Source: Octopus sinensis (Eukaryota). Taken from it: a DNA stretch of 64,000 nucleotides. A program made the position numbers and the translations under genes. The stretch is from assembly GCF_006345805.1 (NCBI RefSeq), contig NC_043014.1, positions 7,254,001 through 7,318,000 on the forward strand, written 5' to 3'. The notes under the pieces are model-generated. The model was not told the DNA's origin and made no database searches. It was given only the letters and a program-made list of their open reading frames with translations. The number at the start of each line of letters is the position of its first letter. Position 1 is the stretch's first letter. Below are positions 29,101 to 62,028 of this stretch, piece after piece.

Positions 29101-30577
29101 CCACTACACTCACGGAGTGGTTGGCGTTAGGAAGGACATCCAGTTGTAGAAACACTGCAAGATCAGACTGGAGCCTGGTGCAGCCCCTGGCTTCCCAGAT
29201 CCCGATCGAACCGTCCAACCCGTGCTAGCACGGAAAACAGACACTAAACGATGATGATGATGATGATGGTCCTGGAAAAGGGGTGGATGATCAACAGTGC
29301 AAGATACAGTGCTTTGCTGGCCAACAGACTGAAGCTTTGTTGTAGCATGACAATGCACACCCACACATGGCTGCCCAAACCATTGAAACCCTTAATTGAT
29401 TTGGGTTTTGAGGTGCTGGAATACCCTGCCACCAAACCCAGATCTCGACCCTTCCGACTAGCATATCTTCGGACTGATCAAAGATGGTTTACGAGGGTGT
29501 CGATTTCCTATGGATGAAGACGTGAAGGAAGAGGTGCATAAATGGTTGCACAAGCAACGGAAGACCTTCTTTTTGTAGGGAATACACAAGCCTGAGGACC
29601 ACTGGGGCAAGTGCATCAGAAAGGAGACTATATATATTTCTGTACTACCCACAAGGGGCGAAACACAGAGAGGACAAACATGGGCAGACAAACGGATTAA
29701 GTCGATTACATCGACCCCAGTGCGTAACTGGTACTTAATTTATCGACCCCGAAAGGATGAAAGGCAAAGTAAACCTCGGCGGAATTTGAACTCAGAATGT
29801 CAAGACAGACGAAATACCGCTGAGCATTTCGCCCGGCGTGCTAACGTTTCTGCCAGCTTGCCGCCTATATAGAAATTACAGCTGTGATACCAGTGCCGGT
29901 GGCACGTAAAAAGCACCACCCGATCGTGGCCGTTTGTCAGCCTCGTCTGGCACCTGTGCCGGTGGTATGTAAAAAGCACCCACTACACTCACGGAGTGGT
30001 TGGCGTTAGGAAGGGCATCCAGCCGTAGAAACATTGCCAGATCAGACTGGGCCTGGTGCAGCCTTCTGGCTTCCCAGACCACAGTTGAAGCGTCCAACCC
30101 ATGCTAGCATGGAAAGCGGACACTAAATGATAACGATGATGATAGAAAAATGATGTACTTGTTTACCCCCTGCTTTTGTGTTTAAATACATTGAAAAACA
30201 AGATTGCATATAATTTTTTTACTCTCCCATATATCATCATAATCATAATCATCATCATTTAACGTCCTTCTCCCATGCTGGTATGGGTTGGATGGCTTGG
30301 CAGAAGCTGGCCAAGCAGGGGCCTGTGCAATGCTTCTGTGTCTGATCTGGCGTGGTTTTTACGGCTGAATTCCCCTCCTAATGCTAACCACTCCATGTGT
30401 GCAGACATGGTAAAAAGTTTGCTTCTCAACCACATCGTTCCAAGTTCAGTCCCACTGCGTGGCACGTTGGCCAAGTGTCTTCCAATATAGCCTTAGGCCA
30501 ACCAAAGCCTTCTGAGGGGATTCGGTAGACGGAAACTGAAAGAAGCTCTGTGTGTATGTTTGTGTGTGTGTGTGTGT

Positions 30578-39900: not shown

Positions 39901-42900
39901 CCCCGTGCCGGTGGCATGTAAAAAGCACCATCCGATCATGGTCGTTGCCAGCCTCGCCTGGCCCCCGTGCCGGTGGCACGTAAAAAGCACCATCCGTCCG
40001 TGGCCGTTTGCCAGCTCCGTCTGGCACCTGTGTGGGTGGCACGTAAAAAGCACCCACTACACTCATGGAGTGGTTGGCGTTAGGGAGGGCATCCAGCTGT
40101 AGAAACACTGCCAGATCAGACTGGAGCCTGGTGCAGCCTTTTGGCTTCCCAGACCCCAGTTGAACCGTCCAACCCATGCTAGCATGGAAAGTGGGCCCTA
40201 AACGATGATGATGATGATGATGATGATGATGTACTTGACTCAATAGGTCTCCTCAAGCACAGTGTGTATATATATATATCATCATCATCCTTTAACGTCC
40301 GCTTTCCATGCTAGCATGGGTTGGACGATTTGACTGAGGACTGGTGAACCAGATGGCTGCGCCAGACTCCAATCTGATCCGGCAGAGCTTTCAGAGCCAG
40401 ATGCCCTTCCTAACGCCAACCACAGGATTAAACCAACAAACATCCACTTGAGCCGTGACTCTTACCAGCACATGGCCACTTGAGCCAATGTATGTCCACT
40501 GAAAACAATACAAGCACAGTTAATCCAACACATGCCCATCCAAAGGCACACGTGTACAGGTAAACATCCCCAGGTCCAGCTACAATAATACTCCACTGTG
40601 GCCCCAGACAAGTTTTCTGTACCCCCTCAGTGCATTTTAGAGAAACAACTCTGCCTAACCACATCTAAATTCAAGATAAAACAAATGATGAAAATTAAAA
40701 TAAAAAGACAAAAAAAAAAGCCTTACCCAAAGGTTTCTTGTTGGCCAGATCACAAAAGTGGGTGGCCATGCCGAGTGTAAGACTGACCAAATCACTATGG
40801 ACAGCAACAGACTTCTTTTGGCCTTGCCAGATCTCCAAGATCCTCCCAAAGAAGTGACTGGCTGACTTTACATGGAGGACCATAATCTGAAAGGTAAATA
40901 TAGAAGAGATAACATGGAGGATTCCACAAGGTGACTCCACATGGGGGACCATAATCGGAAAGGCAAATACCGAAGAAATAACATGGAGGACCATAATCTG
41001 AAAGGCAAACACTGAAGAAATAACATGGAGGATTCCTCATGGAGGATTCCTCATGGAGGATTCCTCATGGAGGACCATAATCTGAAAGGCAAATACTGAA
41101 GAAATAACATGGAGGACCCCTCATGGAGGACCATAATCTGAAAGGCAAATAATGAAGAAATAACATGGAGGATTCCTCATGGAGGATTCCTCATGGAGGA
41201 CCATAATCTGAAAGGCAAATATAGAAGAAATAACATGGAGGACTCCTCATGGATGGCCGTAATCTGAAAGGCAAATAATGAAGAAATAACATGGAGGACC
41301 ATAATCTGAAAGGCAAATATAGAAGAAATAACATGGAGGATTCCTCATGGAGGATTCCTCATGGAGGACCATAATCTGAAAGGCAAATAATGAAGAAATA
41401 ACATGGAGGACCATAATCTGAAAGGCAAATAATGAAGAAATAACATGGAGGACCCCTTATGGAGGACCATAATCTGAAAGGCAAATATAGAAGAAATAAC
41501 ATGGAGGACTCCTCATGGATGGCCGTAATCTGAAAGGCAAATAATGAAGAAATAACATGGAGGACCATAATCTGAAAGGCAAATATAGAAGAAATAACAT
41601 GGAGGACCCCTCATGGAGGACCATAATCTGAAAGGCAAATACATAAGAAGTAACATGGAGGATTCCTCATGGAGGACCATAATCTGAAAGGCAAATATTG
41701 AAGAAATAACATGGAGGACCATAATCTGAAAGGCAAATACTGAAGAAAAACATGGAGGATTCCTCATGGAGGACCATAATCTGAAAGGCAAATATGAAGA
41801 AAAACATGGAGGACCCCTCATGGAGGACCATAATCTGAAAGGCAAATACATAAGAAGTAACATGGAGGATTCCTCATGGAGGACCATAATCTGAAAGGCA
41901 AATATTGAAGAAATAACATGGAGGACCATAATCTGAAAGGCAAATACTGAAGAAATAACATGGAGGATTCCTCATGGAGGACCATAATCTGAAAGGCAAA
42001 TATTGAAGAAATAACATGGAGGACCCCTCATGGAGGACCATAATCTGAAAGGCAAATACTGAAGAAATAACATAGAGGATTCCTCATGGATGGCCATAAT
42101 CTGAAAGGCAAACATAGAAGAAATAACATGGAGGACTCCACATGGAGGACCATAATCTGAAAGGCAAATATTGAAGAAATAACATGGAGGACCCCTCATG
42201 GAGGACCATAATCTGAAAGGCAAATACTGAAGAAATAACATGGAGGATTCCTCATGGAGGACCATAATCTGAAAGGCAAATACTGAAGAAATAACATGGA
42301 AGACTCCTCATGAAAGGGTGTATGTGTGTGTATATGTATGTGTGCATACATGCGTGCGCATGCATGTGTATATGCGTGTGTATACAGAGGCATGTGTGTA
42401 TGTGAGGAGGGTATGTGTATGCATGTGTGTATATGTGTGTGCTTTTTTTTCCTTGTTTTGACATCAAATGGTAGTTATAAACGAACATCACTGCCGTACA
42501 AACTGTGTTATTCATTTCTAATATTCTCCGAGAACATGTTTGGCCATGTGGAGATGTATTACCTCACCAGGAAACAGGCGAGGGTTAGGGACAGGAAAGG
42601 GGTCAAGCCATAGAAAACGTGCCTCAGCAAACTCCATCTGACCATTGCAAGCATGGAAAACTAGACATTAAAACAATGACGATGATGATGATGGTGGTGG
42701 TGGTGGTGGTGGTGGTGGAGGTAATAATGGTGATGTTGGTGATGGTAGTGGTGATGAAGATGATGATGATGATGATGCTCTTGATGGTGGTGGTTGCGGT
42801 CGTGGTGGTGGATAATGATGATGATGATGATGGTTGTAGTGATGGTGAAGATGGTGACGATGATGATGGTGGTGGTGGTGGTGGTGGTGATGGAGGAGGC

Positions 42901-43155
42901 ATTAATGGTGATGTTGGTGATGGTAGTGGTGGTGGTGATGATGATGATGCTCTTGATGGTGGTGGTAGTGGTGATGATGGTGGTTGTGGTTGTGGTGGTG
43001 GATAATGATGATGATGATGATGATGGTTGAGCGAAACTCGCGCTCTCGCCCACGTACAGTGGTGATGATGGTGATGGTAGCAGTGATGGTGATGTTGGTG
43101 ATGGTAGTGATGATGATGATGATGCTCTTGATGAAGGTCGTAGTGGTGATGGTGA

Positions 43156-43189
<34 letters not shown>

Positions 43190-43206
43190 GGTAGTGGTGA
43201 TGATGA

Positions 43207-43245
<39 letters not shown>

Positions 43246-43248
43246 TGA

Positions 43249-43287
<39 letters not shown>

Positions 43288-44748
43288 TGGTGATGATGAT
43301 GATGGTTGTAGTGATGGTGACGATGATGACGGTGGTGGTGGCAGCAGCAACGACGATAGTGGTGGTGGTGATGGTGTTGATGATGATAATTGTGATGATG
43401 ATGATGACGACGACAACGACAATGACATCACTTACCCTCACATCTCCTTGATGAGGCAGCAGGATGTGTTCGTCGCTGCATCCATTCAAATCAACCCCTG
43501 GCAAAACGCTATGGCGCTGGTTGCAGTTGGAATAGCTCCTGAAACAGACAGAAGCACAAGAAATACAGTCGTTGCGGAACAAGAGAAGGAAGAGGTGTAG
43601 GAGAGGCGGACGGTATGGAGTGGCTGGGTGGTAAGTAGCTTGTTTACCAACCCCAAGGTTCCGGGTTCAGTCCCACTGCATCATGGAACCTTGGGCAAGT
43701 GTCTTCTACTATAGCCTCGGGCCGTCCAAAGCCTTGTGAGTGGATTAGGTAGACGGAAACTGAAAGAAGCCTGTCGTATATATGTAAATATATATATATT
43801 TATAGGCGCAGGAGTGGCTGTGTAGTAAGTAGCTTGCTTACCAACCACATGGTTCCGGGTTCAGTCCCACTGCGTGGAACCTTGGGCAAGTGTCTTCTAC
43901 TATAGCCTCGGGCCGTCCAAAGCCTTGTGAGTGGATTAGGTAGACGGAAACTGAAAGAAGCCTGTCGTATATATGTAAATATATATATATTTATAGGCGC
44001 AGGAGTGGCTGTGTAGTAAGTAGCTTGCTTACCAACCACATGGTTCCGGGTTCAGTCCCACTGCGTGGAACCTTGGGCAAGTGTCTTCTACTATAGCCTC
44101 AGGCCGTCCAAAGCCTTGTGAGCGGATTTGAAAGAAGCCCGTCGTATATATGTATATATATATATATGTGTGTGTGTGTATGTTTGTGTGTCTGTGTTTG
44201 TCCCCCTAGCATCGCTTGACAACCGATGCTGGTGTGTTTACATTTCCGTAACTTAGCGGTTCGGCAAAAGAGACGGATAAAATTACATCAGCCCCGGGCC
44301 GACCAATGCCTTGTGAGTGGATTTGGTAGACAGAAACTGAAAGAAGCCCATCATATATATGTGTGTGTGTTGTGTGTGTGTGTGTGTTTGTGTGTCTGTG
44401 TTTGTCCCCCTAGCATTGCTTGACAATTGATGCTGATGTGTTTACATTTCCATCCCTTAGCGGTTCGGCAAAAGAGACCGATAAAATAAGTACTAGGCAT
44501 ACAAAGAATAAGTCCCGGGGTCGATTTGCTCAACTGAAGGCGGTGCTCCAGCATGGCCGCAGTCAAATGACTGAAACAAGTAAAAGAGTAAAAGAGTAAA
44601 GAGTATAAGGAAGGTCCACTGGTCGACCACCCATGCAAATAACCAAAACAAACAAAAATAATGAACCATACCTGCATTTTCCATACATTTTAATGTTATA
44701 ACACAGAGCATTATCTGGGTTCCGTTCGTTCTCCTGGAAAAGAAAATG

Positions 44749-44795
<47 letters not shown>

Positions 44796-44798
44796 GAA

Positions 44799-44834
<36 letters not shown>

Positions 44835-45253
44835 GAAAATGATAATAATAGTCCCTTAGTGGCTGACGATATGTGCATCTCTGATCACGAGCAGAAGTAG
44901 TGGGGGAGCATCATAGCCTTGTGTTGAGAGGGATTCTTTGGGGTTTAAATAATTCACCTCTGGAAACATGGGTGGTTCTTTCAACATCCTTAAACAACCC
45001 TTATTCAGGGACCTTTTGAGCGGGATGGGCTACTCAACCTGAAGAAAATTCTAACTGGGCCCCACCTGCAAGGTCATGTGCTGTTTATCTTGATAAGAGA
45101 TCACCATGTCGCGCACATATGGTTGTGATGCATGTGCCTAGTGTACCCTTATCAGACGGGTAGTCATGATGGGTATATTGGGCTTCGTATATTTTACCCC
45201 AGTGTCACTTTGATGGCATGCACTGCTCTCTCACTCAATAATAATAATCACTC

Positions 45254-45673: not shown

Positions 45674-48600
45674 CTATCACCATCACCACCACCGCGAGTA
45701 GATGGCTTCCAGAGGAGAAGAGTAGAAATTGCCTCGTTTTCAGCTCTACAACAATGTCCAGCAAACTGGACTCTTCTACCTTTCACAAGAGATGACACAG
45801 GTGGTAGTTTCCCATATATTTGCATTTTGGTTGGATGACACTTCCACGAGAGATCTTGAGCTCTCGTAAGGAGGCGAGTGTAGGTTGAAGTACAACAGAA
45901 GGGCAAGAAGAGATGTCTTACCGTAGGAGAGACATGTGGTGACACCTGTTGGAAAACAGAGAGACGATGGTGGTTAAGGTGTGTCAGGATGTACTCCCAG
46001 GTAACAGAAAGGCGAATATAAGAGGAGTCAAGTGAAATCATAGCTGTGGTCGATGCTGGTGCCACATAACCAGCACCCATGCTGGTGGCACACAAAAGGT
46101 ACCCACTTGGAGTGGTTGGCATTTAGGAATGGCATCCAGCCATAGAAACCAGGCTGAATCAGACTGGAACCTGGTACAGCTCTCCGGCTTACTAGTTTTC
46201 GGTCAAACCGTCCGACCCGTGCTAGCATGGGAAATGGAGGTATTATTATTTTTGCCTGTAATTGAAAAAGGTATTATAAAAGGAGAAAGGGGCTCTCTAG
46301 CCCGCTTTTGACCAGGCTCCCGTGGCTTTTATGGGGTTTTTTCCACATGAGACCTTTTCTTTTTTCGAAGCGTCTCCTCTATTGGGAGTTTTGTAAATTG
46401 TTCAATTGTTTCGTTGTTGTAAAGCGGGACTTTTTTCTTTCGAAAAAGGGACAAAACCTTTTGTAAGCTTTCATCCTGTTTTGTCCCTTTGTTTTCTAAT
46501 CATGTTTGTCAGCCCTTGTGGCCAATAAAAAGAATTAATTATTATTATTGTTGTTGTTGTTGTTGTTGTTGTTGTTATTGTGGTGGTGATAATGATGATG
46601 GTGGTGGTGGTGGTGGGGACGGTGGTGATGATGATGGCGATGATGGTGGTGGTGATGATGATGGTGGTGGGGACGGTGGTAATGGTGGTGGTGGTGATGG
46701 CGATGATGGTGGTGGTGATGATGATGGTGATGGCGATGATGGTGATGGTAGTGTTGATGATGATGATAATGATGGTGGTGGTGGTGGTGATGGTGGTGGT
46801 GGTGGTGATGGTGATGATGATGGTGGTGGTGGTGGGGACGGTGGTGATGATGATGGTAATGGTGGTGGTGGTGATGGCGATGATGGTGATGGTGGTGGTG
46901 GTGATGATGATGGTGGTGGGGACGGTGGTGGTGGTGGTGGTGATGGCGATGATGGTGGTGGTGGTGGTAGTGTTGATGATGATGATAATGATGGTGGTGG
47001 TGGTGGTGGTGGCGATGGTGGCGGTGATGGTGGTGGTGATGATGATGGTGGTGGTGGTGATGGTGGTGATGATAATGATGATAGAGAGGATTAGACAAGG
47101 TGAGTGAACCGTTATTGAATTAGTGCAGAATGCCGTAGCAGGATACAGTGTTAGAATAAGAAGAGAATGCAACGGTAGAATGAAGACTTACTTCTTGTAT
47201 TGAAGAGAAAAACTTGATGGTTTCGTCCCTGTGTTGACCGCTGCTGTTGTTCAACAATAAAGACTTCAGACTTTTCACTTTCTTTAAATCCATCTTACTC
47301 ATCAGTATGTAAGATTTACCGAGTCGCAAAGGCACCTGGGAAAATAATTAATATCCTTAAATCTTTCAGTCAAATGACAAAGAAGCCCCTAGATTTACCG
47401 AGTCGCAAAGGCACCTGGGAAAATAATAAATGCCTTAAATCTTTAAGAAAGAAGCCCCTAGATTTACCGAGTCGCAAAGGCACCTGGGAAAATAATTAAT
47501 ATCCTTAAATCTTTCAGTCAAATGACAAAGAAGCCCCTAGATTTACCGAGTCGCAAAGGCACCTGGGAAAATAATAAATGCCTTAAATCTTTAAGAAAGA
47601 AGCCCCTAGATTTACCGAGTCGCAAAGGCACCTGGGAAAATAATAAATGCCTTAAATCTTTAAGAAAGAAGCCCCTAGATTTACCGAGTCACAAAGGCAC
47701 CTGGGAAAATAATAAATGCCTTAAATCTTTCAGTCAAATGACAAAGAAGCCCCTAGATTTACCGAGTCGCAAAGGCACCTGGGAAAATAATAAATGCCTT
47801 AAATCTTTAAGAAAGAAGCCCCTAGATTTACCGAGTCGCAAAGGCACCTGGGAAAATAATTAATATCCTTAAATCTTTCAGTCAAATGACAAAGAAGCCC
47901 CTAGATTTACCGAGTCGCAAAGGCACCTGGGAAAATAATAAAGCCTTAAATCTTTAAGAAAGAAGCCCCTAGATTTACCGAGTCGCAAAGGCACCTGGGA
48001 AAATAATAAATGCCTTAAATCTTTAAGAAAGAAGCCCCTAGATTTACCGAGTCACAAAGGCACCTGGGAAAATAATAAATGCCTTAAATCTTTGAGTCAA
48101 ATGAGAAAAAAGCCCCCAGATTTACCGAGTCGCAAAGGCACCTGGGAAAATAATAAATGCCTTAAATCTCTAAGAAAGAAGCCCCTAGATTTACCGAGTC
48201 ACAAAGGCACCTGGGAAAATAATAAATGCCTTAAATCTTTGAGTCAAATGAGAAAGAAGCCCCCAGATTTACCGAGTCGCAAAGGCACCTGGGAAAATAA
48301 TAAATGCCTTAAATCTTTAAGAAAGAAGCCCCTAGATTTACCAAGTCGCAAAGGCACCAGGGAAAATAATAAATGCCTTAAATCTTTGAGTCAAATGAGA
48401 AAGAAGCCCCTAGACTTACCAAGTCGCAAAGGCACCTGGGAAAATAATTAATGCCTTAAATCTTTGAGTCAAATGAGAAAGAAGCCCCTAGATTTACCGA
48501 GTCGCAAAGGCACCTGGGAAAATAATAAATGCCTTAAATCTTTAAGAAAGAAGCCCCTAGATTTACCGAGTCACAAAGGCACCTGGGAAAATAATAAATG

Positions 48601-51600
48601 CCTTAAATCTTTGAGTCAAATGAGAAAGAAGCCCCTAGATTTACCATGTCGCAAAGGCACCTGGGAAAATAATAAATGCCTTAAATCTTTGAGTCAAATG
48701 GGAAAGAAGCCCCTAGATTTACCGAGTCGCAAGGCCACCTGGGAAAATAATAAATGCCTTAAATCTTTGAGTCAAATGAGAAAGAAGCCCCTAGATTTAC
48801 CGAGTCGCAAAGGCACCTGGGAAAATAATAAATGCCTTAAATCTTTGAGTCAAATGAGAAAGAAGCCCCTAGACTTACCAAGTCGCAAAGGCACCTGGGA
48901 AAATAATAAATGCCTTAAATCTTTGAGTCAAATGAGAAAGAAGCCCCTAGACTTACCAAGTCGCAAAGGCACCTGGGAAAATAATAAATGCCTTAAATCT
49001 TTGAGTCAAATGAGAAAGAAGCCCCTAGACTTACCGAGTCGCAAAGGCACCTGGGAAAATAATAAATGCCTTAAATCTTTGAGTCAAATGAGAAAGAAGC
49101 CCCTAGATTTACCGAGTTGCAAAGGCACCTGGGAAAATAATTAATGCCTTAAATCTTTGAGACAAATGAGAAAGAAGCCCCTAGATTTACCGAGTCGCAA
49201 AGGCACCTGGGAAATTAATAAGTGCCTTAAATCTTTGAGTCAAATGAGAAAGAAGCCCCCAGATTTACCGAGTCACAAAGGCACCTGGGAAAATAATTAA
49301 TATCCTTAAATCTTTAAGAAAGAAGCCCCTAGATTTACCGAGTCGCAAAGGCACCTGGGAAAATAATAAATGCCTTAAATCTTTAAGAAAGAAGCCCCTA
49401 GATTTACCGAGTCACAAAGGCACCTGGGAAAGTAATAAATGCCTTAAATCTTTAAGAAAGAAGCCCCTAGATTTACCGAGTCACAAAGGCACCTGGGAAA
49501 ATAATAAATGCCTTAAATCTTTGAGTCAAATGAGAAAGAAGCCCCTAGATTTACCATGTCGCAAAGGCACCTGGGAAAATAATAAATGCCTTAAATCTTT
49601 GAGTCAAATGGGAAAGAAGCCCCTAGATTTACCGAATCGCAAAGGCACCAGGGAAAATAATAAATGCCTTAAATCTTTGAGTCAAATGAGAAAGAAGCCC
49701 CTAGAGTTACCAAATCGCAAAGGCACCTGGGAAAATAATAAATGCCTTAAATCTTTAAGAAAGAAGCCCCTAGATTTACCGAGTCACAAAGGCACCTGGG
49801 AAAGTAATAAATGCCTTAAATCTTTAAGAAAGAAGCCCCTAGATTTACCGAGTCACAAAGGCACCTGGGAAAATAATAAATGCCTTAAATCTTTGAGTCA
49901 AATGAGAAAGAAGCCCCTAGATTTACCATGTCGCAAAGGCACCTGGGAAAATAATAAATGCCTTAAATCTTTGAGTCAAATGGGAAAGAAGCCCCTAGAT
50001 TTACCGAATCGCAAAGGCACCAGGGAAAATAATAAATACCTTAAATCTTTGAGTCAAATGAGAAAGAAGCCCCTAGATTTACAGAGTCGCAAAGGCACCT
50101 GGGAAAATAATAAATGCCTTAAATCTTTGAGTCAAATGAGAAAGAAGCCCCTAGATTTACCGAGTCGCAAAGGCACCTGGGAAAATAATAAATGCCTTAA
50201 ATCTTTGAGTCAAATGAGAAAGAAGCCCCTAGATTTACCAAATCGCAAAGGCTCCTGGGAAAATAATTAATGCCTTAAATCTTTGAGTCAAATGAGAAAG
50301 AAGCCCCTAGATTTACCGAGTCGCAAGGCCACCTGGGAAAATAATAAATGCCTTAAATCTTTGAGTCAAATGAGAAAGAAGCCCCTAGATTTACCGAATC
50401 GCAAAGGCACCTGGGAAAATAATAAATGCCTTAAATCTTTGAGTCAAATGAGAAAGAAGCCCCTAGATTTACCGAGTCGCAAAGGCACCTGGGAAAATAA
50501 TAAATGCCTTAAATCTTTGAGTCAAATGAGAAAGAAGCCCCTAGACTTACCAAGTCGCAAAGGCACCTGGGAAAATAATAAATGCCTTAAATCTTTGAGA
50601 CAAATGAGAAAGAAGCCCCTAGACTTACCAAGTCGCAAAGGCACCTGGGAAAATAATAAATGCCTTAAATCTCTGAGTCAAATGAGAAAGAAGCCCCTAG
50701 ATTTACCGAGTCGCAAAGGCACCTGGGAAAATAATTAATGCCTTAAATCTTTGAGACAAATGAGAAAGAAGCCCCTAGATTTACCATGTCGCAAAGGCAC
50801 CTGGGAAAATAATAAATGCCTTAAATCTTTGAGTCAAATGGAAAGAAGCCCCTAGATTTACCGAATCGCAAGGCACCAGGGAAAATAATAAATGCCTTAA
50901 ATCTTTGAGTCAATGAGAAAGAAGCCCCTAGATTTACCAATCGCAAAGGCACCAGGGAAAATAATAAATGCCTTAAATCTTTAAGAAAGAAGCCCCTAGA
51001 TTTACCGAGTCACAAAGGCACCTGGGAAAATAATAAATGCCTTAAATCTTTGAGTCAAATGAGAAAGAAGCCCCTAGATTTACATGTCGCAAAGGCACCT
51101 GGGAAAATAATAAATGCCTTAAATCTTTGAGTCAAATGAGAAAGAAGCCCCTAGATTTACCGAGTCGCAAGGCCACCTGGGAAAATAATAAATGCCTTAA
51201 ATCTTTGAGTCAAATGGGAAAGAAGCCCCTAGATTTACCGAATCGCAAAGGCACCAGGGAAAATAATAAATGCCTTAAATCTTTGAGTCAAATGAGAAAG
51301 AAGCCCCTAGATTTACCAAATCGCAAAGGCACCTGGGAAAATAATTAATGCCTTAAATCTTTGAGTCAAATGAGAAAGAAGCCCCTAGATTTACCGAGTC
51401 GCAAGGCCACCTGGGAAAATAATAAATGCCTTAAATCTTTGAGTCAAATGAGAAAGAAGCCCCTAGATTTACCGAGTCGCAAAGGCACCCGGGAAAATAA
51501 TAAATGCCTTAAATCTTTGAGTCAAATGAGAAAGAAGCCCCTAGATTTACCGAGTCGCAAAGGCACCTGGGAAAATAATAAATGCCTTAAATCTTTGAGT

Positions 51601-54600
51601 CAAATGAGAAAGAAGCCCCTAAATTTACCGATTCACAAAGGCACCTGGGAAAATAATAAATGCCTTAAATCTTTGAGTCAAATGAGAAAGAAGCCCCTAG
51701 ACTTACCAAGTCGCAAAGGCACCTGGGAAAATAATAAATGCCTTAAATCTTTGAGTCAAATGAGAAAGAAGCCCCTACATGGTCACTAGACATGCTAAAA
51801 ATAACAACTAATACATGTACTAATCAGGTTCTTAGAAAATTGAAGGACAAAGTGAATATTTCGGGTTTAGTCTGTCTTTATTTATTGTTACTGAAGACTC
51901 AGAGTGGCTGAACAGTTTGAGAAGTTTGCTTTGCAACCATGAAGTCCTAGGTTCAATCCTACAAGGTGGCATCTTGGGAAAGTGTTTTCAACCATAGTCG
52001 TGAACTGAACCAAGGTTTGTGAATGAAACTAGGTAGATGGCAACTGTACCGAAGCCTGTCATATGGGCTATCATCAGCAGTGATGCCATGTGCGTGGATC
52101 TCTGTGATGCTCTGTCACCATCCAATTCTTCAAATTGGGAGTCTGAGGAGGCTGTGATGATTCTTTCATGTGTGTCTGTGTTTGTCTCCCTAGCATTGCT
52201 TGACAACCGATGCTGGTGTGTTTACGTCCCCGTCACTTAGCGGTTCGGCAAAAGAGACCAATAGAATAAGTACTGGGCTTACAAAAGAATAAGTCCCGGG
52301 GTCGAGTTGCTCGATTAAAGGCGGTGCTCCAGCATGGGCGCAGTCAAAATGACTGAAACAAGTAAAAAGTAAAAAAGAAAAAAAATATATATACATACAT
52401 ATGTATGTGTATGTCTGTGTGTCTGTGTTCGTCAAAGCCAACCACTGTTTAAACAACCGGTGTTGGTTTGTTTACACCCCTGTAACTCAGCAGTTCGCCA
52501 AAAGAAACTGATAGAATAAGTACCAGACTTAAAACGGAGTGAGATAAATAAATACTGGGCGGCGGCGGGGGGGGGGCATTCTGTTTGAGTGAAACTCTTG
52601 AAGGCAGTGCTGCAGCATGGGCAGAGCCCAATGACTGAAGCAAGTAATAAACAAAAACAAAAAAAAAAAAACAAAGTAAAAGATTCACAGAAAATAAGAC
52701 GGATCTTTTCCTTTTGAACGGCAGACAATTTCTGATTAACTAAACACTTTAAAACTTTGTATACTGCTAGAATGTGTCAAAAGAAAACATTTTTTTCTCT
52801 TGGCTTTCTTTGAGAAAATTGTAATTTGTTTGTTTAACGTAGTTTAATTTTTCGAATTTTAACCAATCCTATGCTCTCTTTTGAGCTAAAATCATTTGCC
52901 GCGTCTAAAACTGAGACAACATCCTGTAACTAACCCTAAACCTCCCCCCTAACCCTAACCCTAAATTTTTTTTTCTTAATTGTTAAATTAATTTAATTGT
53001 TGCGCGTGCAAAAAAACCTAAAGCAATGGAATTTGATTAATTTAACAATTTAGAAAAAAAAATTAGGGGTTAGTGTTAGGGGGGAGGTTTAGGGTTAGTT
53101 ACAGGATGTTGTCTCAGTTTTAGATGTAGCAAATGATTTTAGTTGAATGGAGGTAATCGATTGGTTAAAATTGCCGAAATACTCGGATTTTCAGACGAAA
53201 TATCTTACAAACTATAGAATTTTCTCAATAAAACCAAGAGAAAATGATGTTTTATAAACACATTCTACCAGTATACGAAGTTTAAAAGTGTTTAGTTAAC
53301 TTGGTTAAAATTGCCGAAATGCTCAGATTTTCAGACAAAATATTGTACAAACTATAGAATTTTCTCAATAAAGCCAAGAGAAAAAGATGTTTTATAAACA
53401 CATTCTACCAGTATACGAAGTTTAAAAGTGTTTAGTTAACTTGGTTAAAATTGCCGAAATGCTTGGATTTTCAGACGAAATATCTTACAAACCATAGAAT
53501 TTTCTCAATAAAACCAAGAGAAAATGATGTTTTATAAACACATTCTACCAGTATACGAAGTTTAAAAGTGTTTAGTTACCTTGGTTAAAATTGCCGAAAT
53601 GCTTGGATTTTCAGACGAAATATCTTACAAACTATAGAATTTTCTCAATAAAACCAAGATAAATGATGTTTTATAAACACATTCTACCAGTATACGAAGT
53701 TTAAAAGTGTTTAGTTAACTAGAAATTGTGTTGATATCTGCCGTTCAAAAGGAAAAGATCCAAAAAGACAAAACAACACAAACAACAAACAAACAAACAG
53801 GGGAATGTGTTCCAGTTCTTAATCTGTACTTACCGTTTTATCGTTGTAATGGGGGTAATATTTACTCATCGTCTGCATTCTAAGACCGACGTGGACCTTT
53901 TTAGATGGGAACTGATAATGAACAATACAGGTGGCATCGGAAATCTTCAGGTCACAAAGAACACTATCAGGACACACTATAAAATAACAAGAACAATAAT
54001 AATGATGATAATGATGATGATGATGATGATGATGATGACGGTTTCAAATTTTGCCACAAGGCAGCAATGCTCGTATGGGTCAGAAGGAATTTGTTCATTG
54101 CTTGTACCAATGAAATACCTATTTCTTTACTACCCACAAGGGGCTAAACACAGAAGGGACAAACAAGGACAGACAAACGGATTAAGTCGATTACATCGAC
54201 CCTAGTGCGTAACTGGTACTTTATTTATCGACCCTGAAAGGATGAAAGGCAAAGTCGACCTCGGCGGAATTTGAACTCAGAACGTAACGGCAGACGAAAT
54301 ACCTATTTCTTTACTACCCACAAGGGGCTAAACATAGAGGGGACAAACAAGGACAGACAAACGAATTAAGTCGATTACATCGGCCCCAGTGCGTAACTGG
54401 TACTTAATTTATCGACCCAGAAAGGACGAAAGGCAAAGTCGACATTGGTGGAATTTGAATTCACAACGTAAAGACAGATGAAATACTTATTTCTTTACTA
54501 CTCACAAGGGGCTAAACACAGAGAGGACAAACAAACGAATTAAGTCGATTACATCGGCCCCAGTGCGTAACTGGTACTTAATATATCGACCCAGAAAGGA

Positions 54601-55181: not shown

Positions 55182-55704
55182 CACATATACGACAGGCTTC
55201 TTTCAGTTTCCGTCTACCAAATCCACTCACAAGGCATTGGTCGGCCCGGGGCTATAGCAGAAGACACTTGCCCAAGATGCTATGCAGTGGGACTGAACCC
55301 GGAACCATGTGGTTGGTTAGCAAGCTACTTACCACACAGCCACTCCTGCGCCCATTCATTTTATTTCCAGTTTGATTTAATCGCACCCAGAATGTGGCTG
55401 ATTTTCACACTACTGACCCTGAAAGATCTTAAGGTAATGATGTCAACCCTAGCAACCAAGTGGATGAAAAAAGCAGAAGCAACAGGAAAAAAAAAAAGGG
55501 ATTTTTTGGTAAATAATGGATATGCCATGAAGTTAGTAAAATTTACCTAGGAATCGGTAAGGCTCATTTTCAGACAGGGGTCGATGCCATTGCTTCGAGG
55601 ATTCCTCACGTTGGGCTAAATACGAAGAGCTCCAGACTCCAATAGCAGCTGATGTCAGGTAATTGTTCAATAACTGAATAATAATAATAATAATGAAAAT
55701 GATG

Positions 55705-55744
<40 letters not shown>

Positions 55745-58700
55745 CAACAACTGAGCAAATATAAAGATCTTGAAATAGAAATCAGCAAAATGTGGAACCT
55801 GAAGACTAAAACAATACCTGTTGTCATAGGTGCCCTGGGAATGATAGCAAAAGGGGCTGATTGCTACCTAACTCAGATACCAGGAAACCCCAAAATGGCA
55901 GAAATTCAAAAGATAGTGCTCATGGGAACTGCTCATATCCTACGCAAAATACTCTCTATGTCATCCCAAGGTTTAAAACAAACTTTTTTTAAACTTTTTT
56001 TATTTATTTATTTATTAGACATTCACTAATACAACACCAAAAAAAAAACCCCAAATATATGGCACACTAGGCATAACAACAATGTGAACTTCCAGCCTGT
56101 TGTCTCTTGAGGTCTCTGGGTGAGACTTGGAGCCAACTTGTACAGACATAAAGCAAAAGTCAAACATAGAATCATAATTCTTTTCTTTTATTCTTTTACT
56201 AGTTTCAGTCATTTGACTGCGACCATGCTGGAGCACCGCCTTTAGTCGAGCAAATCGATTCCGGGACTTTGTAAGTCCAGTACTTATTCTATCGGTCTCT
56301 TCTGCTGAACCGCTAAGTGATAATGTTGGTGGTGGTGGTAGTGATGATGGTGGTGGTGGTGGTGGTAGTGATAATGTTGGTGGTGGTGGTAGAGATGATG
56401 TTGGTGGTGGTGGTGGTGATGTTGATGGTGGTGATGGTGGTGGTGGTGATAATGATGGTGGTGGTGGTGGTGGTAGTGATAATGTTGGTGGTGGTGGTGG
56501 AAATGTTGATGGTGGTGGTGGTGATAATGTTGGTGGTGGTGGTGGTGGTGGTGGTGTGATGTTGATGGTGGTGGTGGTGGTTGTTATGTGATTGTCATGG
56601 TGGTGGTGATTGATGATTATGACGATGATGGTGATAGTGATGGTGGTAGCGATTGCAGTGGTGATGACGAGCATGACAACAACGATGCTGGTGATGACAG
56701 CGTCATTCTCCCAGGTCAAACAGAAGACATGATGCTCTCCAGCTCCCCAGACCTCACAAATGTGTACCGTATCACCGACACTACAACTTCCATAGTAACC
56801 CACTTGTGATGATGAGGAAGGAGCAGAAGAGGCAGAAGAGGGGAGATGTACTTACAAATAAAACCTTGTGACAACTCTGATCCCCATCGGTGAAGATGAT
56901 TACTTTCTCGCCTTGGATGGTCAGGTCTGGAAGGAGTTCGATTAGTTTCCTCTCACGGCCATCTTCCGTTGTAATCATTGGAATCTGAGAGAAAAAAAAA
57001 GTAAAAAGGCTTAGTAGAAGACACTTGCTCAAGGTGCCACATAGTAGAATTGAACCTGAAACTTAGGGGTCAGACAGTAAACTTTTTAACCCAATAGCCA
57101 TGCTTAGCTACACCAGCACATTCACTCACACAGACCACACTACACTACATGGTAATCGCTATTTGAGATTACAGTCTCCAATTCTACATGAATTACAGAC
57201 TGTAAAAATGAAATAAAAAATGAAATAAAATGAAATAAAAAAGAAATCAAAAAGAAATACAATGAAAGCCAACTGCATCTCACTCACCTGTTTAACTCGG
57301 CCGTAGGTGGATGCTTCTATCATGTCCGTAATGACAATAACAACATCCTCCAGTGCATTCATGGCAAATGTTCTGACATGAGACGTCCAATTACTACCAA
57401 AGATCATCACCTGGTTTTGCAGATTAGATCTCTGCTTCGAGAGCAGCACTTGCTTCTTCAGGGACCGCATAAGATCTCGAATCTGTAATGAAAAACGGAA
57501 ATAAAATAAAGGTAAGATGACATACACATTCATCATCATCATTTAGTGTCCGCTTTCCATGCTAGCATGGGTTGGACGGTTCAACTGGGGTCTGTGAAGC
57601 CGGAAGGCTTCATCAGGCCCAGTCAGATCTGGCAGTGTTTCTACGGCTGGATGCCCTTCCTAACGCCAACCACTCCGTGAGAGTAGTGGATGCTTTTTAC
57701 GTGCCACCCGCACAGGTGCCAGACAGAGCTGGCAAATGGCCATGAACGGATGGTGCTTTTATGTGCCACCGGCACGGGGGCCAGGCGAGGCTGGCAACGG
57801 ACACGAACAGATGGTGCTTTTACGTGCCACTGGCACGGGGGCCAGGCGAGGCTCATTCATAAAATCTTCTGGCACATTTACAAAGTGATTATGTCATGGG
57901 CTGTTCTTTCTCGCCACTGGAGAACAATTCCTTTCAGGTGAGCACGTGTTTCTAATGCACTTTATTCCTTAGAGTGAGGGGACTTTGGGACACTTGGTGT
58001 TTCAACATTGCTGTATATCTTCAGTCAAAGCTACCCTGGACTAATGAATCTAACAACTTTTCCTTTCAGATGAATGTGTGTTCATAATACATTTGATTAT
58101 TTAACATAAGGAGACTTTGTGACACCTGGTGTTTCAATATCATTGTACCTCCTCAGTCAAAGCTAACCCAGACTAATGAATCGAACAAGAATAGCAATGA
58201 GCATGCACAAGGTGAATTCAAAAAAATGTCTGAATTTATTTTTAACAGTCAAAACTAATGTTGTGTGGGAAGTAACACCCACGCCTTGGCTGGCTTCCGT
58301 GCCGGTGGCACGTTAAAAGCACCGACCGATCGTGGCCGATGCCAGACTCCCCTAGCACCTGTACAGGTGGCACGTAAAAAGCACCCACTACACTCGTGGA
58401 GTGGTTGGCGTTAGGAAGGGCATCCAGCTGTAGAAACACTGCCAGATCAGACTGGAGCCTGGTGCAGCCCCTGGCTTCCCAGACCCCAGTCGAACCGTCC
58501 AACCCATGCTAGCATGAAAAACGGACGCTAAACGATGAGGATGATTGAATGTATTGTGTGAAGATATTGCATCAAGTTTTGCCAAAAGCTTGATGGTGCT
58601 CCAAGCTCGAAACCTTCCAGAAAATTCAGCAGACTTTTGGCAATGATGCCATGGACAAAAGTCAGATAAAGGAGTGGTGCATGTCTTGCTAGTATATTAT

Positions 58701-60004: not shown

Positions 60005-62028
60005 TAATAATAATAATAACAATAATAATAATAATAATAATGATGATCCTTTCTACTGGAAGCACAAGGCTTCAAATTTGGGGGTGGGGATGAAGTAATT
60101 ACATCGACCCCAGTACGTAACTGATACTTATTTAATCGACCCTGAAATGATGAAAGGCAAAGTCAAGCTCAGCAGAATTTGAACTCAGAATGTAGAGACA
60201 GACAAAATGTCGCTAAGCATTTTGTCCAGCATGTCAACACTTCTGTCAGCTGGCCGCTTATATAATAACAAAAAAATGGACTTCTTCATGTCATCTGATA
60301 GGATAGAAAATGATTTTTTTCTTTTTAACCCTTTCTTTACTGTATTTATTTTGAGATGCTCTGTGTGTCTTTTAATTACTTTAAATATAACAAAGTATTT
60401 AGTAAAATAACTTAGTTACCATTAAGCTAGTGTTAGGAACATAAATTGTGACTAAGGTTTGGTGGAAGATTCTAATTCAGAACTTTTGAAAACAAGACAT
60501 TTGTACTCAGAGCCAGAAGCAGTTTCAGCCGGGTTGGTATCAAAAGGATTAAGAATTGTTTCTCTATTATATATATTTTAACCCTTTTGTTACCATATTT
60601 CTGTTGAGATGCTCTGTGTTTCTTTCAATTACTTTAAATATAACAAAGTATTTAGTAAAATAACTTAGTTACCATTAAGCTAGTGTTAGGAACATAAATT
60701 GTGACTAAGGTTTGGTGGAAGATTTTAATTCAGAACTTTTGAAAACAAGACATTTGTACTCAGAGCCAGAAGCAGTTTCAGCCGGGTTGGTATCAAAAGG
60801 ATTAAGAATTGTTTCTCTATTATATATATTTTAACCCTTTTGTTACCATATTTCTGTTGAGATGCTCTGTGTTTCTTTCAATTACTTTAAATATAACAAA
60901 GTATTTAGTAAAATAACTTGGTTATCATTCAGCTAGTGTTTGGAACATAAATTGTGACTAAGGTTTGGTAGAAGATTTTAATTCAGAACTTTTGAAAACA
61001 AGACATTTGTACTCAGAGCCAGAAGCAGTTTCAGCCGGGTTGGTATCAAAAGGATTAAGAATTGTTTCTCTATTATATATATTTTAACCCTTTTGTTACC
61101 ATATTTCTGTTGAGATGCTCTGTGTTTCTTTCAATTACTTTAAATATAACAAAGTATTTAGTAAAATAACTTGGTTATCATTCAGCTAGTGTTAGGAACA
61201 TAAATTGCGACTAAGGTTTGGTGGGAGATTTTAATTCAGAACTTTTGGAAACAAGACATTTGTACTCAAGAGCCAGAGGCGGTTTCAGCCAGGTTGGTAT
61301 CAAAAGGGTTAAATAACAAAACAAACAAAGCAATGAAATACTTGCATCACTGTAGAAGTCTTCAAGAATGATATCAGCTTCATCAATAATCTGTTAACGA
61401 GGAATCAGAGAAAAAAAAAACCGATATAAAGGGATTACTGTGATTATGGTTGGGCAGAGACAAACAGACAGAAATATTTAGATTTTGCATCATCATCATC
61501 ACTACAATTACCACTTTTCCATCCTTGCATGGGTCTGACAGAATTTGCTGAGTCTTATTTGCTGCAGCTGGATGCTCCTACTGTTAGCAGCCTTCACTTG
61601 TTTCCAAGCACGCTAATGCTTCCCCATAGTCAGACATGTTTTCACGGAGGATTGTAAACAAAGGACACCATTTATATGATGATAACACTTATTTACAACT
61701 AATGCGTGATATCAAGACAAGGACGCACATAATTACAAGGCTAATATTGACTAAAAGCCATAGAAGATATTGCTGAAGGCGCCATCAAAGACATAGGCTG
61801 TAAAATAAATACAACAGCATAGATTTTGTATCATCATCATCACTATAATTACCACTTTTCCATCCTTGCATGGGTCTGACAGAATTCGCTGAGTCTTATT
61901 TGCTGCAGCTGGATGCTCCTCCAGTTATCAACCTTCACTTGTTTCCAAGCATGCTAATACTCCCCCATGGCCGGGCATGTTTTCACAGAGGATTGTAAAC
62001 ACAGGACATGCATGTTCATCTCTTTCTT

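What the first reader, a model, noticed from the sequence alone, without database searches (positions are those of the whole stretch)
47312..51777. About 59-copy array of the exon W7 acceptor, with an AG|GT proto-splice site and poison frame
Seen on the minus strand: the 78-nt unit is aggggcttctttctcatttgactcaaagatttaaggcatttattattttcccag|GTGCCTTTGCGACTCGGTAAATCT. It carries a branch-point-like TTGAC about 33 nt upstream of the AG. By hand count about 51 upstream copies keep the AG and about 7 have lost it. The 69-nt variant loses both the TTGAC and the in-frame TGA. Using a decoy reads [14 protein letters not shown]-stop, or hits the same TGA in a downstream long unit, so decoys should be poison. 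Every junction is CAG|GT. Established: tandem duplication of an AGGT-containing segment is a proposed route to intron gain, and AG|GT sites can be recursive splice points. Inference: the array might be removed stepwise (a ratchet) and still give the correct mRNA.
Basis: partly seen in the sequence, partly recalled or inferred. Interest (0 to 1): 0.8.

Follow-up and report, generated by a model that had tools for sequence, protein, structure and literature searches.

The report
Splice-acceptor minisatellite inside a TDRD12 intron
A 4.5-kb tandem repeat in an intron of a TDRD12-type gene copies the gene's real splice acceptor 58 extra times; it is most likely a tolerated by-product of repeat expansion rather than a stepwise-splicing device, and scallop and abalone TDRD12 genes carry similar arrays.

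Summary
On the minus strand, window 51776..47312 holds 59 head-to-tail units: 44 long (76-79 nt) and 15 short (68-70 nt). Each is 54 nt of intron end plus the first 24 nt of exon W7. The last unit is the true junction and is identical to two decoys. Of the 58 decoys, 51 keep CAG, and all 51 reach an in-frame stop within 3-40 codons.

The host gene is a TDRD12 orthologue (DEAD and Tudor domains; best matches are mollusc TDRD12). Homology fixes the W7 start: an invariant Ser is the last codon of the repeated 24 nt. The intron sits at the same place and phase in scallop and abalone. So the intron is ancient and the array is a later, lineage-specific expansion, not an intron gain.

The ratchet idea is not supported. 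The donor regenerated after W6-to-decoy splicing (ACG|GTGCCT) scores -1.9 bits, below all 72 verified mollusc TDRD12 donors.

Scallop and abalone TDRD12 carry 7 and 3 such junction-copying arrays, one with about 94 acceptor copies. That is roughly the number expected from random repeat births.

Best reading: a tolerated minisatellite, the acceptor-side mirror of the human F7 and CBS donor arrays. No RNA data were available, so how the true site is chosen is inferred.

The parts
47312..51776 (-). Whole tandem array: 59 units (44 long of 76-79 nt, 15 short of 68-70 nt). Each unit is 54 (or 45) nt of intron 3' end plus the first 24 nt of exon W7.
   Evidence: TRF; unit parsing and MAFFT alignment; 54 junction 30-mers against 0 in shuffles.
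47391..51776 (-). The 58 decoy units. 51 keep CAG, and 50 of those are CAG|GT. All 51 meet an in-frame stop after 3-40 codons. Blocks of about 5 units repeat as higher-order units (7-11, 23-27, 28-32, 50-54, 55-59).
   Evidence: In units 46-59 the mean edit distance is 2.0 at a lag of 5 units against 9.9 at a lag of 1.
47312..47390 (-). Terminal unit 59 (79 nt): the authentic 3' splice site (AG at 47337-47336) plus the first 24 nt of W7. Identical to decoy units 52 and 57.
   Evidence: Acceptor matrix score 9.9 bits (57th percentile of real mollusc TDRD12 acceptors); the consensus decoy scores 8.9.
47192..47335 (-). Exon W7, 144 nt, phase 0 at both ends. It encodes [48 protein letters not shown] and is followed by the donor GAA|GTAAGT.
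   Evidence: Sequence. It aligns to 12 TDRD12 homologues, and the Ser of GKS|YIL is invariant. From +25 on, the exon body is 58% purine with 7 GAA/GAG motifs.
53834..53976 (-). Exon W6, 143 nt. It encodes (x)[47 protein letters not shown], the degenerate helicase motif V/VI region. Its donor is ACG|GTAAGT.
   Evidence: Sequence. It aligns with the conserved VIHYDLP.SKTKFGNRLSCM..YY block. The phase-1 start matches the scallop exon.
47336..53833 (-). The W6-W7 intron, 6498 nt. 68% of it is the array.
   Evidence: An orthologous phase-0 intron is present in scallop (L004 29328-30078) and abalone (L005 29622-30243).
48414..51709 (-). Span holding seven strong donor-like sites, 16 nt after the decoy AG in units 1, 15, 16, 36, 37, 38 and 44. 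The last 'exon' bases are at 51707, 50629, 50551, 49035, 48957, 48879 and 48420. Six are TTG|GTAAGT (8.8 bits) and unit 36 is TCG|GTAAGT (7.9 bits). Paired with the acceptor of the preceding unit they form 94-nt pseudo-exons. Most other units carry the weaker TCG|GTAAAT (3.9 bits).
   Evidence: Matrix scan of the array; unit alignment.

Best explanation
This is a lineage-specific intronic minisatellite. It was made by tandem amplification of a 78-nt segment that happened to straddle the 3' splice site of an ancient phase-0 intron in the TDRD12 orthologue. The likely process was slippage followed by unequal crossing-over.

Because the segment includes the polypyrimidine tract, the CAG and the first 8 codons of exon W7, each new copy is a full-strength decoy acceptor placed upstream of the real one.

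The array has no purpose of its own. It persists because it does little harm.

Inferred mechanism of tolerance: only the last copy is followed by the rest of the exon, which is purine-rich with GAA/GAG motifs, and by a strong donor 144 nt downstream. Exon definition would therefore pick that copy. Transcripts that do use a decoy carry a stop within 3-40 codons and would be cleared by mRNA surveillance.

Shown: the array, its origin from the gene's own junction, the age of the intron, the decoy stops, the poor regenerated donor, and the recurrence of such arrays in other mollusc TDRD12 genes at about the random-birth rate.

Inferred: which site the spliceosome uses and why, and the absence of a function.
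For: 1. Origin from the gene itself. The repeated 24 exon nt end in the codon for a Ser that is invariant in 13 aligned TDRD12 proteins. The 14-residue linker between '...YY' and 'SYIL' has the same length as in scallop. The window holds no other copy of the unit.
2. The intron predates the array. Scallop has ...SSKEK|INIDPTSYIL and abalone ...SKPQE|SSVTPTSYIF, both phase 0 and without any such array.
3. Ordinary minisatellite dynamics. There are 5-unit higher-order repeats and 36 distinct variants. Most variable sites are CpG-to-TpG changes in the exon-derived part. Both CpGs survive in 11 of 14 exon-proximal units (46-59) but in only 13 of 31 distal units (1-31).
4. No sign of selection on the decoy AG. 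Seven decoys have lost it, and these fall in related higher-order blocks. That is comparable with other non-CpG variable sites.
5. The same thing is common elsewhere. In scallop TDRD12, 7 of 27 arrays reiterate a splice junction. One is a 40-nt x 94 acceptor array ending at the exon orthologous to W6, with 85 copies of the junction 16-mer. In abalone it is 3 of 19. Expected numbers under random birth are about 5.4 and 1.7, assuming about 88 junctions per gene (my hand calculation from the array periods and pre-expansion lengths), so there is no depletion.
6. What sets the true site apart. Purine fraction is 0.58 with 7 GAR motifs after the true +24, against 0.42 and 0 GAR after a decoy. The real donor (9.2 bits) lies at +144.
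7. Precedent. Human junction-reiterating minisatellites (F7, LMNB2, PDGF) use only the authentic site although the pseudo-sites are functional (PMC1557585).
Against: - There are no RNA data for this species. Both searches with the gene's own exons found no close relative, so no transcript of this species is in the collection.
- Decoys score as typical real acceptors: 8.9 bits, with three equal to the true site.
- Decoys are transcribed before the true site. A first-come or 5'-to-3' scanning rule, as proposed from duplicated globin sites (cited in PMC1557585), would favour them.
- Seven units carry strong donors that make good-looking 94-nt pseudo-exons, so some mis-splicing is expected and its cost is unknown.
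- The random-birth expectation rests on three genes of one family.
- Copy number in the assembly is unverified. The scaffold has a 100-N gap elsewhere in the window.
Confidence: 0.6

Rival explanations
1. Regulated unproductive splicing. The decoys are used at a meaningful rate. Because every decoy leads to a premature stop, the array would act as a copy-number-dependent brake on TDRD12 output.
For: All 51 decoys that keep CAG give stops within 3-40 codons. Decoy acceptors score like real ones, and seven strong GTAAGT donors create 94-nt pseudo-exons. Decoys are transcribed first.
Against: The array is lineage-specific. Scallop and abalone have no array at this intron. Decoy AGs and CpGs decay as neutral sequence would. 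Junction-copying arrays occur at about the random-birth frequency in orthologues. There are no RNA data.
Confidence: 0.12
2. Nested pre-removal. Donors and acceptors inside the array splice to each other first, shortening the intron and removing most decoys before the final W6-to-W7 join. This leaves no trace in the mRNA.
For: Each unit holds a donor-like site 16 nt after its AG, and seven of these are strong. The unit-internal 'intron' of 62 nt has a pyrimidine tract and a TTGAC motif.
Against: The common donor TCG|GTAAAT is weak (3.9 bits, 6th percentile). A 53-62-nt intron may be too short. Every internal splice rebuilds a unit-like sequence with an intact decoy acceptor, so the choice problem remains. 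There are no RNA data.
Confidence: 0.08
3. Assembly artefact or dead allele. The copy number is inflated by mis-assembly, or this haplotype or gene copy is no longer functional.
For: The scaffold has a 100-N gap at 21924-22023. No independent assembly of the array was found: the W7 open frame is not on record and the array's plus-strand frame has no relatives.
Against: The units show structured variation (36 variants, imperfect higher-order blocks) rather than collapsed or cloned identical copies. All exons examined are open and align to TDRD12, both in the helicase core and in the Tudor domain. Scallop and abalone assemblies show the same type of array.
Confidence: 0.07
4. W6 splices to a decoy AG|GT, the junction regenerates a donor, and the array is removed step by step to give the correct mRNA.
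For: AG|GT is juxtaposed in 50 decoys. Recursive sites do have this layout (PMC8605326).
Against: The regenerated donor ACG|GTGCCT scores -1.9 bits, below all 72 verified mollusc TDRD12 donors; CAG|GTGCCT scores 0.8. The competing donor at +16 is stronger in every unit that keeps it, which by donor competition (PMC8605326) predicts retention of a 16-nt frameshifting piece. The intron is only 6.5 kb. The site is not conserved in orthologues.
Confidence: 0.04
5. A dispersed satellite or a transposon-borne tandem repeat inserted next to W7 and donated the present acceptor and the first 8 codons.
For: The window is full of dispersed tandem-repeat families, for example 249-254-nt units at three loci. 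The 7 residues before the invariant Ser lie in a variable linker.
Against: No other copy exists in 64 kb. The unit ends exactly with the invariant Ser codon. Linker length, intron position and phase all match the orthologues. I could not search this organism's whole genome.
Confidence: 0.04

Closest known systems
Human minisatellites that reiterate an exon/intron junction: F7 IVS7 37-bp VNTR, CBS IVS13 31-bp VNTR, LMNB2, interferon-inducible 6-16, PDGF (as listed in PMC1557585)
   Same: A tandem array whose terminal unit contains the authentic junction, so that identical pseudo splice sites line up inside the intron. Only, or mainly, the exon-contiguous site is used.
   Different: All of those cases listed in PMC1557585 are donor-side, with 5-25 copies, and the authentic site is transcribed first. 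Here the array is acceptor-side with 58 decoys that are all transcribed before the authentic site, so 5'-to-3' scanning cannot explain correct choice. Usage here is untested.
Junction-reiterating arrays in scallop (Mizuhopecten yessoensis) and abalone (Haliotis cracherodii) TDRD12, found here
   Same: Same gene family and same architecture. The closest is a 40-nt x 94 array (32 intron + 8 exon nt) ending at the acceptor of the exon orthologous to W6. Using one of its decoys also gives an early TGA.
   Different: They sit at different introns, have unrelated unit sequences and arose independently. The scallop and abalone models are database gene predictions, and I did not see their RNA support.
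Recursive splice sites or ratchet points (Drosophila Ubx, kuz, Bx; vertebrate RS-exons; PMC8605326, PMC6224609)
   Same: Acceptor and GT are juxtaposed (AG|GT), with a short cryptic exon and its own donor downstream.
   Different: The regenerated donor is far below any real donor (-1.9 bits). The intron is short. The site is not conserved. It is repeated 50 times rather than being single.
Intron gain by tandem duplication of an AGGT-containing exon segment (PMC3265369; potato RdRp gene, PMC4974935) and introns born from tandem arrays (Zhuo et al. 2007, cited in PMC2812944)
   Same: Tandem duplication of a segment containing AG|GT creates extra splice signals.
   Different: No new intron was created here. 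The intron is shared with scallop and abalone, and the duplication only lengthened it.

Membership tests
Junction-reiterating minisatellite (F7 / CBS / LMNB2 type) | Head-to-tail tandem array of a 10-300-nt unit inside an intron | tested here: met
   59 units of 78 or 69 nt; TRF score 6721.
Junction-reiterating minisatellite (F7 / CBS / LMNB2 type) | The terminal unit contains the authentic exon/intron junction | tested here: met
   The unit's last 24 nt are the first 8 codons of W7, including the Ser invariant in 13 homologues. The intron position is shared with scallop and abalone.
Junction-reiterating minisatellite (F7 / CBS / LMNB2 type) | Pseudo-sites identical or nearly identical to the authentic site | tested here: met
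   Units 52 and 57 are identical to unit 59. 39 sites have the consensus acceptor at 8.9 bits, against 9.9 for the true one.
Junction-reiterating minisatellite (F7 / CBS / LMNB2 type) | Authentic site used and pseudo-sites mostly silent in RNA; copy number varies between individuals | not testable with these tools
   No transcripts or population data for this organism were reachable.
Recursive splice site / ratchet point | Juxtaposed acceptor and GT (AG|GT) | tested here: met
   50 decoys are CAG|GT.
Recursive splice site / ratchet point | A regenerated 5' splice site strong enough to outcompete the cryptic-exon donor | tested here: not met
   ACG|GTGCCT scores -1.9 bits, below all 72 real donors. 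The competing +16 donors score 3.9 to 8.8 bits. The rule comes from PMC8605326.
Recursive splice site / ratchet point | Conserved position in a very long intron | tested here: not met
   The intron is 6.5 kb, and there is no counterpart in the scallop or abalone intron.
Recursive splice site / ratchet point | Splicing intermediates or lariats at the site | not testable with these tools
   No RNA data.
Intron gain by tandem AGGT duplication | The intron is absent from orthologues that lack the duplication | tested here: not met
   A phase-0 intron sits 6-7 codons before the conserved SYIL in scallop, abalone and the window.
Conserved poison exon / regulated unproductive splicing | Inclusion introduces a premature stop | tested here: met
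   All 51 decoys stop after 3-40 codons.
Conserved poison exon / regulated unproductive splicing | The element is conserved across species | tested here: not met
   Absent from the orthologous intron of scallop and abalone. The units decay at CpGs.
TDRD12 (host gene) | DEAD-box helicase core followed by a Tudor domain; closest relatives annotated as TDRD12 | tested here: met
   Pfam DEAD 8.8e-5 on two exons and Tudor 3e-20. 196 hits, the top ones at 32-38% identity, named TDRD12 in Mizuhopecten, Magallana and Haliotis.

The most novel reading that the evidence does not exclude
Splice-junction-copying minisatellites may be a common, effectively neutral feature of mollusc genes. If so, acceptor-side arrays like this one (58 decoys) and the scallop one (about 94) would show that dozens of full-strength acceptors, transcribed before the true site, are ignored. 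That would mean 3' splice-site choice in these animals is anchored by the exon body rather than by order of transcription or scanning from the donor. The arrays would then be ready-made natural competition assays for that rule.
Probability: 0.35. Interest if true: 0.55.

Novelty: new variant of a known kind. Interest (0 to 1): 0.45.

Why it matters
Tandem arrays that copy a splice donor have been used in human genes (F7) to work out how the authentic site is chosen. I found no reported natural acceptor-side array. It is the harder case, because every decoy is made before the real site.

If gonad RNA shows clean W6-W7 joining despite 58 equal decoys, that is strong natural evidence for exon-anchored acceptor choice. 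If decoys are used, TDRD12, a piRNA-pathway gene needed for fertility in other animals (from my own knowledge), would carry a copy-number-dependent handicap worth genotyping.

The scallop and abalone results suggest that such arrays accumulate at about the rate repeats arise. That points to a testable genome-wide pattern in repeat-rich invertebrate genomes. It also warns gene annotators that the exon-contiguous copy is the one to choose.

Tried and rejected
1. Protein searches with the W7 peptide, with concatenated exons and with the array's plus-strand frame found nothing. So there is no transcript or independent assembly of this species in that collection.
2. An exact look-up of the W7 open frame found no record.
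3. Solved-structure search with W6+W7 gave only a chance ribosomal-protein hit.
4. RNA folding of the long, short and terminal units. The consensus units can form a small hairpin around the pyrimidine tract and AG, which the terminal unit type lacks. But all folds are no better than shuffles (z of +0.3 to +1.2), so I dropped structure as the discriminator.
5. Rfam on the whole window gave no family at gathering score.
6. An alternative W7 start at the downstream AAG|ATG was rejected. It would delete the conserved SYIL and has no pyrimidine tract.
7. TTGAC as the branch point was not adopted. AGs lie 7 and 14 nt downstream of its A, and PMC1636351 places the AG exclusion zone about 7-19 nt after the branch point. 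Short units keep other yUnAy-like motifs, so 'short units lack a branch point' is not established.
8. Enrichment of junction-spanning arrays in TDRD12: observed 7 and 3 against about 5.4 and 1.7 expected is not a significant excess, so I make no claim of a junction-targeted mechanism.
9. Organism identity was not established. Logan contigs from SRR11869391, SRR11869394 and SRR11869385 carry one exon at 90% nucleotide identity, so they come from a related species. The dispersed SINE-like element reminds me of octopus repeats, but that is memory only and untested.

Full report
OBSERVATION

On the minus strand, window 51776..47312 holds a head-to-tail array. TRF reports a 78-nt period, 92% matches and score 6721. 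Anchoring on GGGGCTTCTT gives 59 units. The coordinates printed are 1 too low, which I checked against the ruler.

There are 44 long units (76-79 nt) and 15 short units (68-70 nt). The short ones lack a 9-nt block that carries both TTGAC and an in-frame TGA. A 30-mer across the junction occurs 54 times at up to 3 mismatches, only inside the array, against 0 in shuffles.

51 of the 58 upstream units keep CAG and 7 have lost the A. Unit 20 is CAG|GA, so 'every junction is CAG|GT' is slightly overstated. Reading from each of the 51 decoy acceptors gives a stop after 14 codons in 31 cases. In 11 cases the stop comes after 3 codons, where CpG decay turned CGA into TGA, and in the other 9 after 18-40 codons. 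The last unit, 47390..47312, is the real junction and is identical to decoy units 52 and 57.

THE GENE AND THE EXON

Minus-strand exons encode a DEAD-box core and a Tudor domain (Pfam). A full HMMER search with the spliced helicase exons gave 196 hits. The best, at 32-38% identity over about 270 residues, are 1,800-2,100-residue proteins with Tudor, DEAD and Helicase_C domains. Their sources name them TDRD12 in Mizuhopecten, Magallana and Haliotis.

In the alignment, W6 matches the conserved block VIHYDLP.SKTKFGNRLSCM..YY. A variable linker follows, and then an invariant Ser and YIL.TE. In the window this reads ...[10 protein letters not shown]|[14 protein letters not shown]. The invariant Ser is the last codon of the 24 exon nucleotides that belong to the repeat, and the linker has 14 residues, as in scallop. 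Those 24 nt contain no other AG, and the next AG downstream would delete SYIL. So the true acceptor is the last CAG|GTG.

W7 is 47335..47192 (144 nt, phase 0 at both ends, donor GAA|GTAAGT). W6 is 53976..53834 (donor ACG|GTAAGT). The intron is 6,498 nt, and 68% of it is the array.

THE INTRON IS OLD AND THE ARRAY IS YOUNG

I fetched the scallop and abalone TDRD12 genes and mapped their exons. Both have a phase-0 intron 6 codons before the conserved Ser: scallop ...SSKEK|INIDPTSYIL and abalone ...SKPQE|SSVTPTSYIF. Neither intron holds a comparable array. So intron gain by AGGT duplication (PMC3265369, PMC4974935) does not apply. A segment of 54 intron nt plus 24 exon nt was amplified inside an existing intron.

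The array behaves like an ordinary minisatellite.
- It has 36 distinct unit variants.
- It has 5-unit higher-order blocks. In units 46-59 the mean edit distance is 2.0 at a lag of 5 units against 9.9 at a lag of 1.
- Most of its variable sites are CpG-to-TpG changes in the exon-derived part.
- Both CpGs are intact in 11 of the 14 exon-proximal units but in only 13 of the 31 distal ones. This fits recent growth or homogenisation next to the selectively maintained true junction.

TESTING THE RATCHET

From 72 introns of the scallop, abalone and oyster genes whose junctions reproduce the annotated protein exactly, I built donor and acceptor weight matrices.

| Site | Score (bits) | Standing among the 72 real sites |
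|---|---|---|
| Native W6 donor ACG\|GTAAGT | 9.7 | 79th percentile |
| Native W7 donor GAA\|GTAAGT | 9.2 | 69th percentile |
| Regenerated donor ACG\|GTGCCT | -1.9 | below all (minimum 2.8) |
| Unit donor at +16, TCG\|GTAAAT | 3.9 | 6th percentile |
| Unit donor at +16, TCG\|GTAAGT (unit 36) | 7.9 | 44th percentile |
| Unit donor at +16, TTG\|GTAAGT (6 units) | 8.8 | 61st percentile |
| True acceptor | 9.9 | 57th percentile |
| Consensus decoy acceptor | 8.9 | 43rd percentile |

The donor that a W6-to-decoy join would regenerate is therefore worse than any real donor. Each unit also carries a better donor 16 nt further on. In Drosophila, competition between the ratchet-point donor and the cryptic-exon donor decides whether the cryptic exon disappears (PMC8605326). 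By that rule a used decoy here would keep a 16-nt piece, which shifts the frame into a TAA, instead of vanishing. The ratchet is therefore unlikely.

The decoys themselves are not weak. The seven strong donors pair with the acceptor of the preceding unit to give 94-nt pseudo-exons.

WHAT SETS THE TRUE SITE APART

Units 52, 57 and 59 are identical. Any discrimination between them must therefore come from more than 24 nt downstream of the AG. After the true site comes the exon body, which is 58% purine with 7 GAA/GAG motifs, and then a strong donor at +144. After a decoy comes unit sequence, which is 42% purine with no GAA/GAG motif. This fits exon definition, but it is an inference. Unit RNA folds are no better than shuffles.

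THE SAME THING ELSEWHERE

Scallop TDRD12 is one-third tandem repeat, and 7 of its 27 arrays reiterate a splice junction.
- Five are donor arrays, including 54 nt x 14.8, 51 nt x 15 and 60 nt x 8.6.
- Two are acceptor arrays, of 128 nt x 4 and 40 nt x 94.
- The 94-copy array ends at the acceptor of the exon orthologous to W6. It includes 8 exon nt and holds 85 copies of the junction 16-mer.

Abalone has 3 such arrays among 19, including a 20-nt x 28 donor array. The compact oyster gene has none.

If arrays are born at random positions, the expected numbers are about 5.4 for scallop and 1.7 for abalone. I calculated these by hand, assuming about 88 junctions per gene, from the array periods and pre-expansion lengths. 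So such arrays are not depleted, and they are not clearly enriched either. That argues they are tolerated rather than purposeful.

WHAT IS KNOWN

Human minisatellites that reiterate an exon/intron junction are described for F7, CBS, LMNB2, the interferon-inducible 6-16 gene and PDGF. In F7, only the most upstream of 5-9 identical donors is used, although the others are functional (PMC1557585). The cases listed there are donor-side. My library searches found no natural acceptor-side array.

The acceptor side is mechanistically harder, because the decoys are transcribed before the true site.

VERDICT

The ratchet is not supported.

The best reading is a lineage-specific, tolerated minisatellite that copies the W7 acceptor. 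It is an acceptor-side variant of a known kind of element and one instance of what looks like a common pattern in mollusc TDRD12 genes.

Which sites are used in RNA, the true copy number and the identity of the organism remain untested.

Noticed in passing
L004 (scallop TDRD12 gene) 25429-29186: A 40-nt x 94 array ends at the acceptor of the exon orthologous to W6 (ttcctcag|TTTGTACG). It holds 85 copies of the junction 16-mer. Using a decoy gives ICTLR-stop.
   Followed up: yes
L004 23889-24688; 33753-34523; 37051-37569; 8567-9145; 57241-57797; 31611-32130: Five donor-side arrays and one more acceptor-side junction-reiterating array lie in the same scallop gene. The 54-nt donor array is an open, in-frame 18-residue repeat (SKYDMEEWAGPSDKGKIL), so use of a downstream donor would add residues rather than a stop.
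   Followed up: partly
L005 (abalone TDRD12 gene) 44411-44969; 55619-56021; 64100-64268: There is a 20-nt x 28 donor array (CAAG|GTAAAT, 26 copies keeping GT) and two small acceptor arrays with 4 and 2 copies.
   Followed up: partly
window 21924-22023: A run of 100 N marks a scaffold gap inside the gene region.
   Followed up: no
window 46580-47082 (also 42676-43319 and about 56020-56600): Long (CAC/CAT)n-type microsatellites lie on the gene strand. The first starts about 110 nt after the W7 donor. They give long His- or Thr-rich open frames that a gene finder could mistake for exons.
   Followed up: no
window 53161-53720: A 140-nt x 4 array starts about 113 nt downstream of the W6 donor and contains no exon sequence. 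A (TCA)n run also forms part of the pyrimidine-rich stretch just upstream of the W6 acceptor (54030-53985).
   Followed up: no
window 2172-2852, 16556-17491, 60323-61312 (and about 26300-26700): The same 249-254-nt unit occurs as short tandem arrays at several places, so it is a dispersed tandem-repeat family. One copy starts about 25 nt after the exon that encodes the DEAD motif.
   Followed up: no
window 15270-16395, 43617-44128 and many single copies: A SINE-like element of about 190 nt, often in tandem, fills much of the introns. So do arrays of 62-68 nt (5855-6140, 10983-11694, 31235-31512, 34488-35521, 39720-40054).
   Followed up: no
window 51794 (minus strand): A strong acceptor-like site (ttgttatttttag|CATG, 9.8 bits) lies 18 nt upstream of the first array unit.
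   Followed up: no
L001-L003 (Logan contigs from SRR11869391, SRR11869394, SRR11869385): These genomic contigs come from a related species. They carry the motif-III helicase exon at 90% nucleotide identity and its flanking intron at about 81%. They could lead to the relative's W7 intron.
   Followed up: partly
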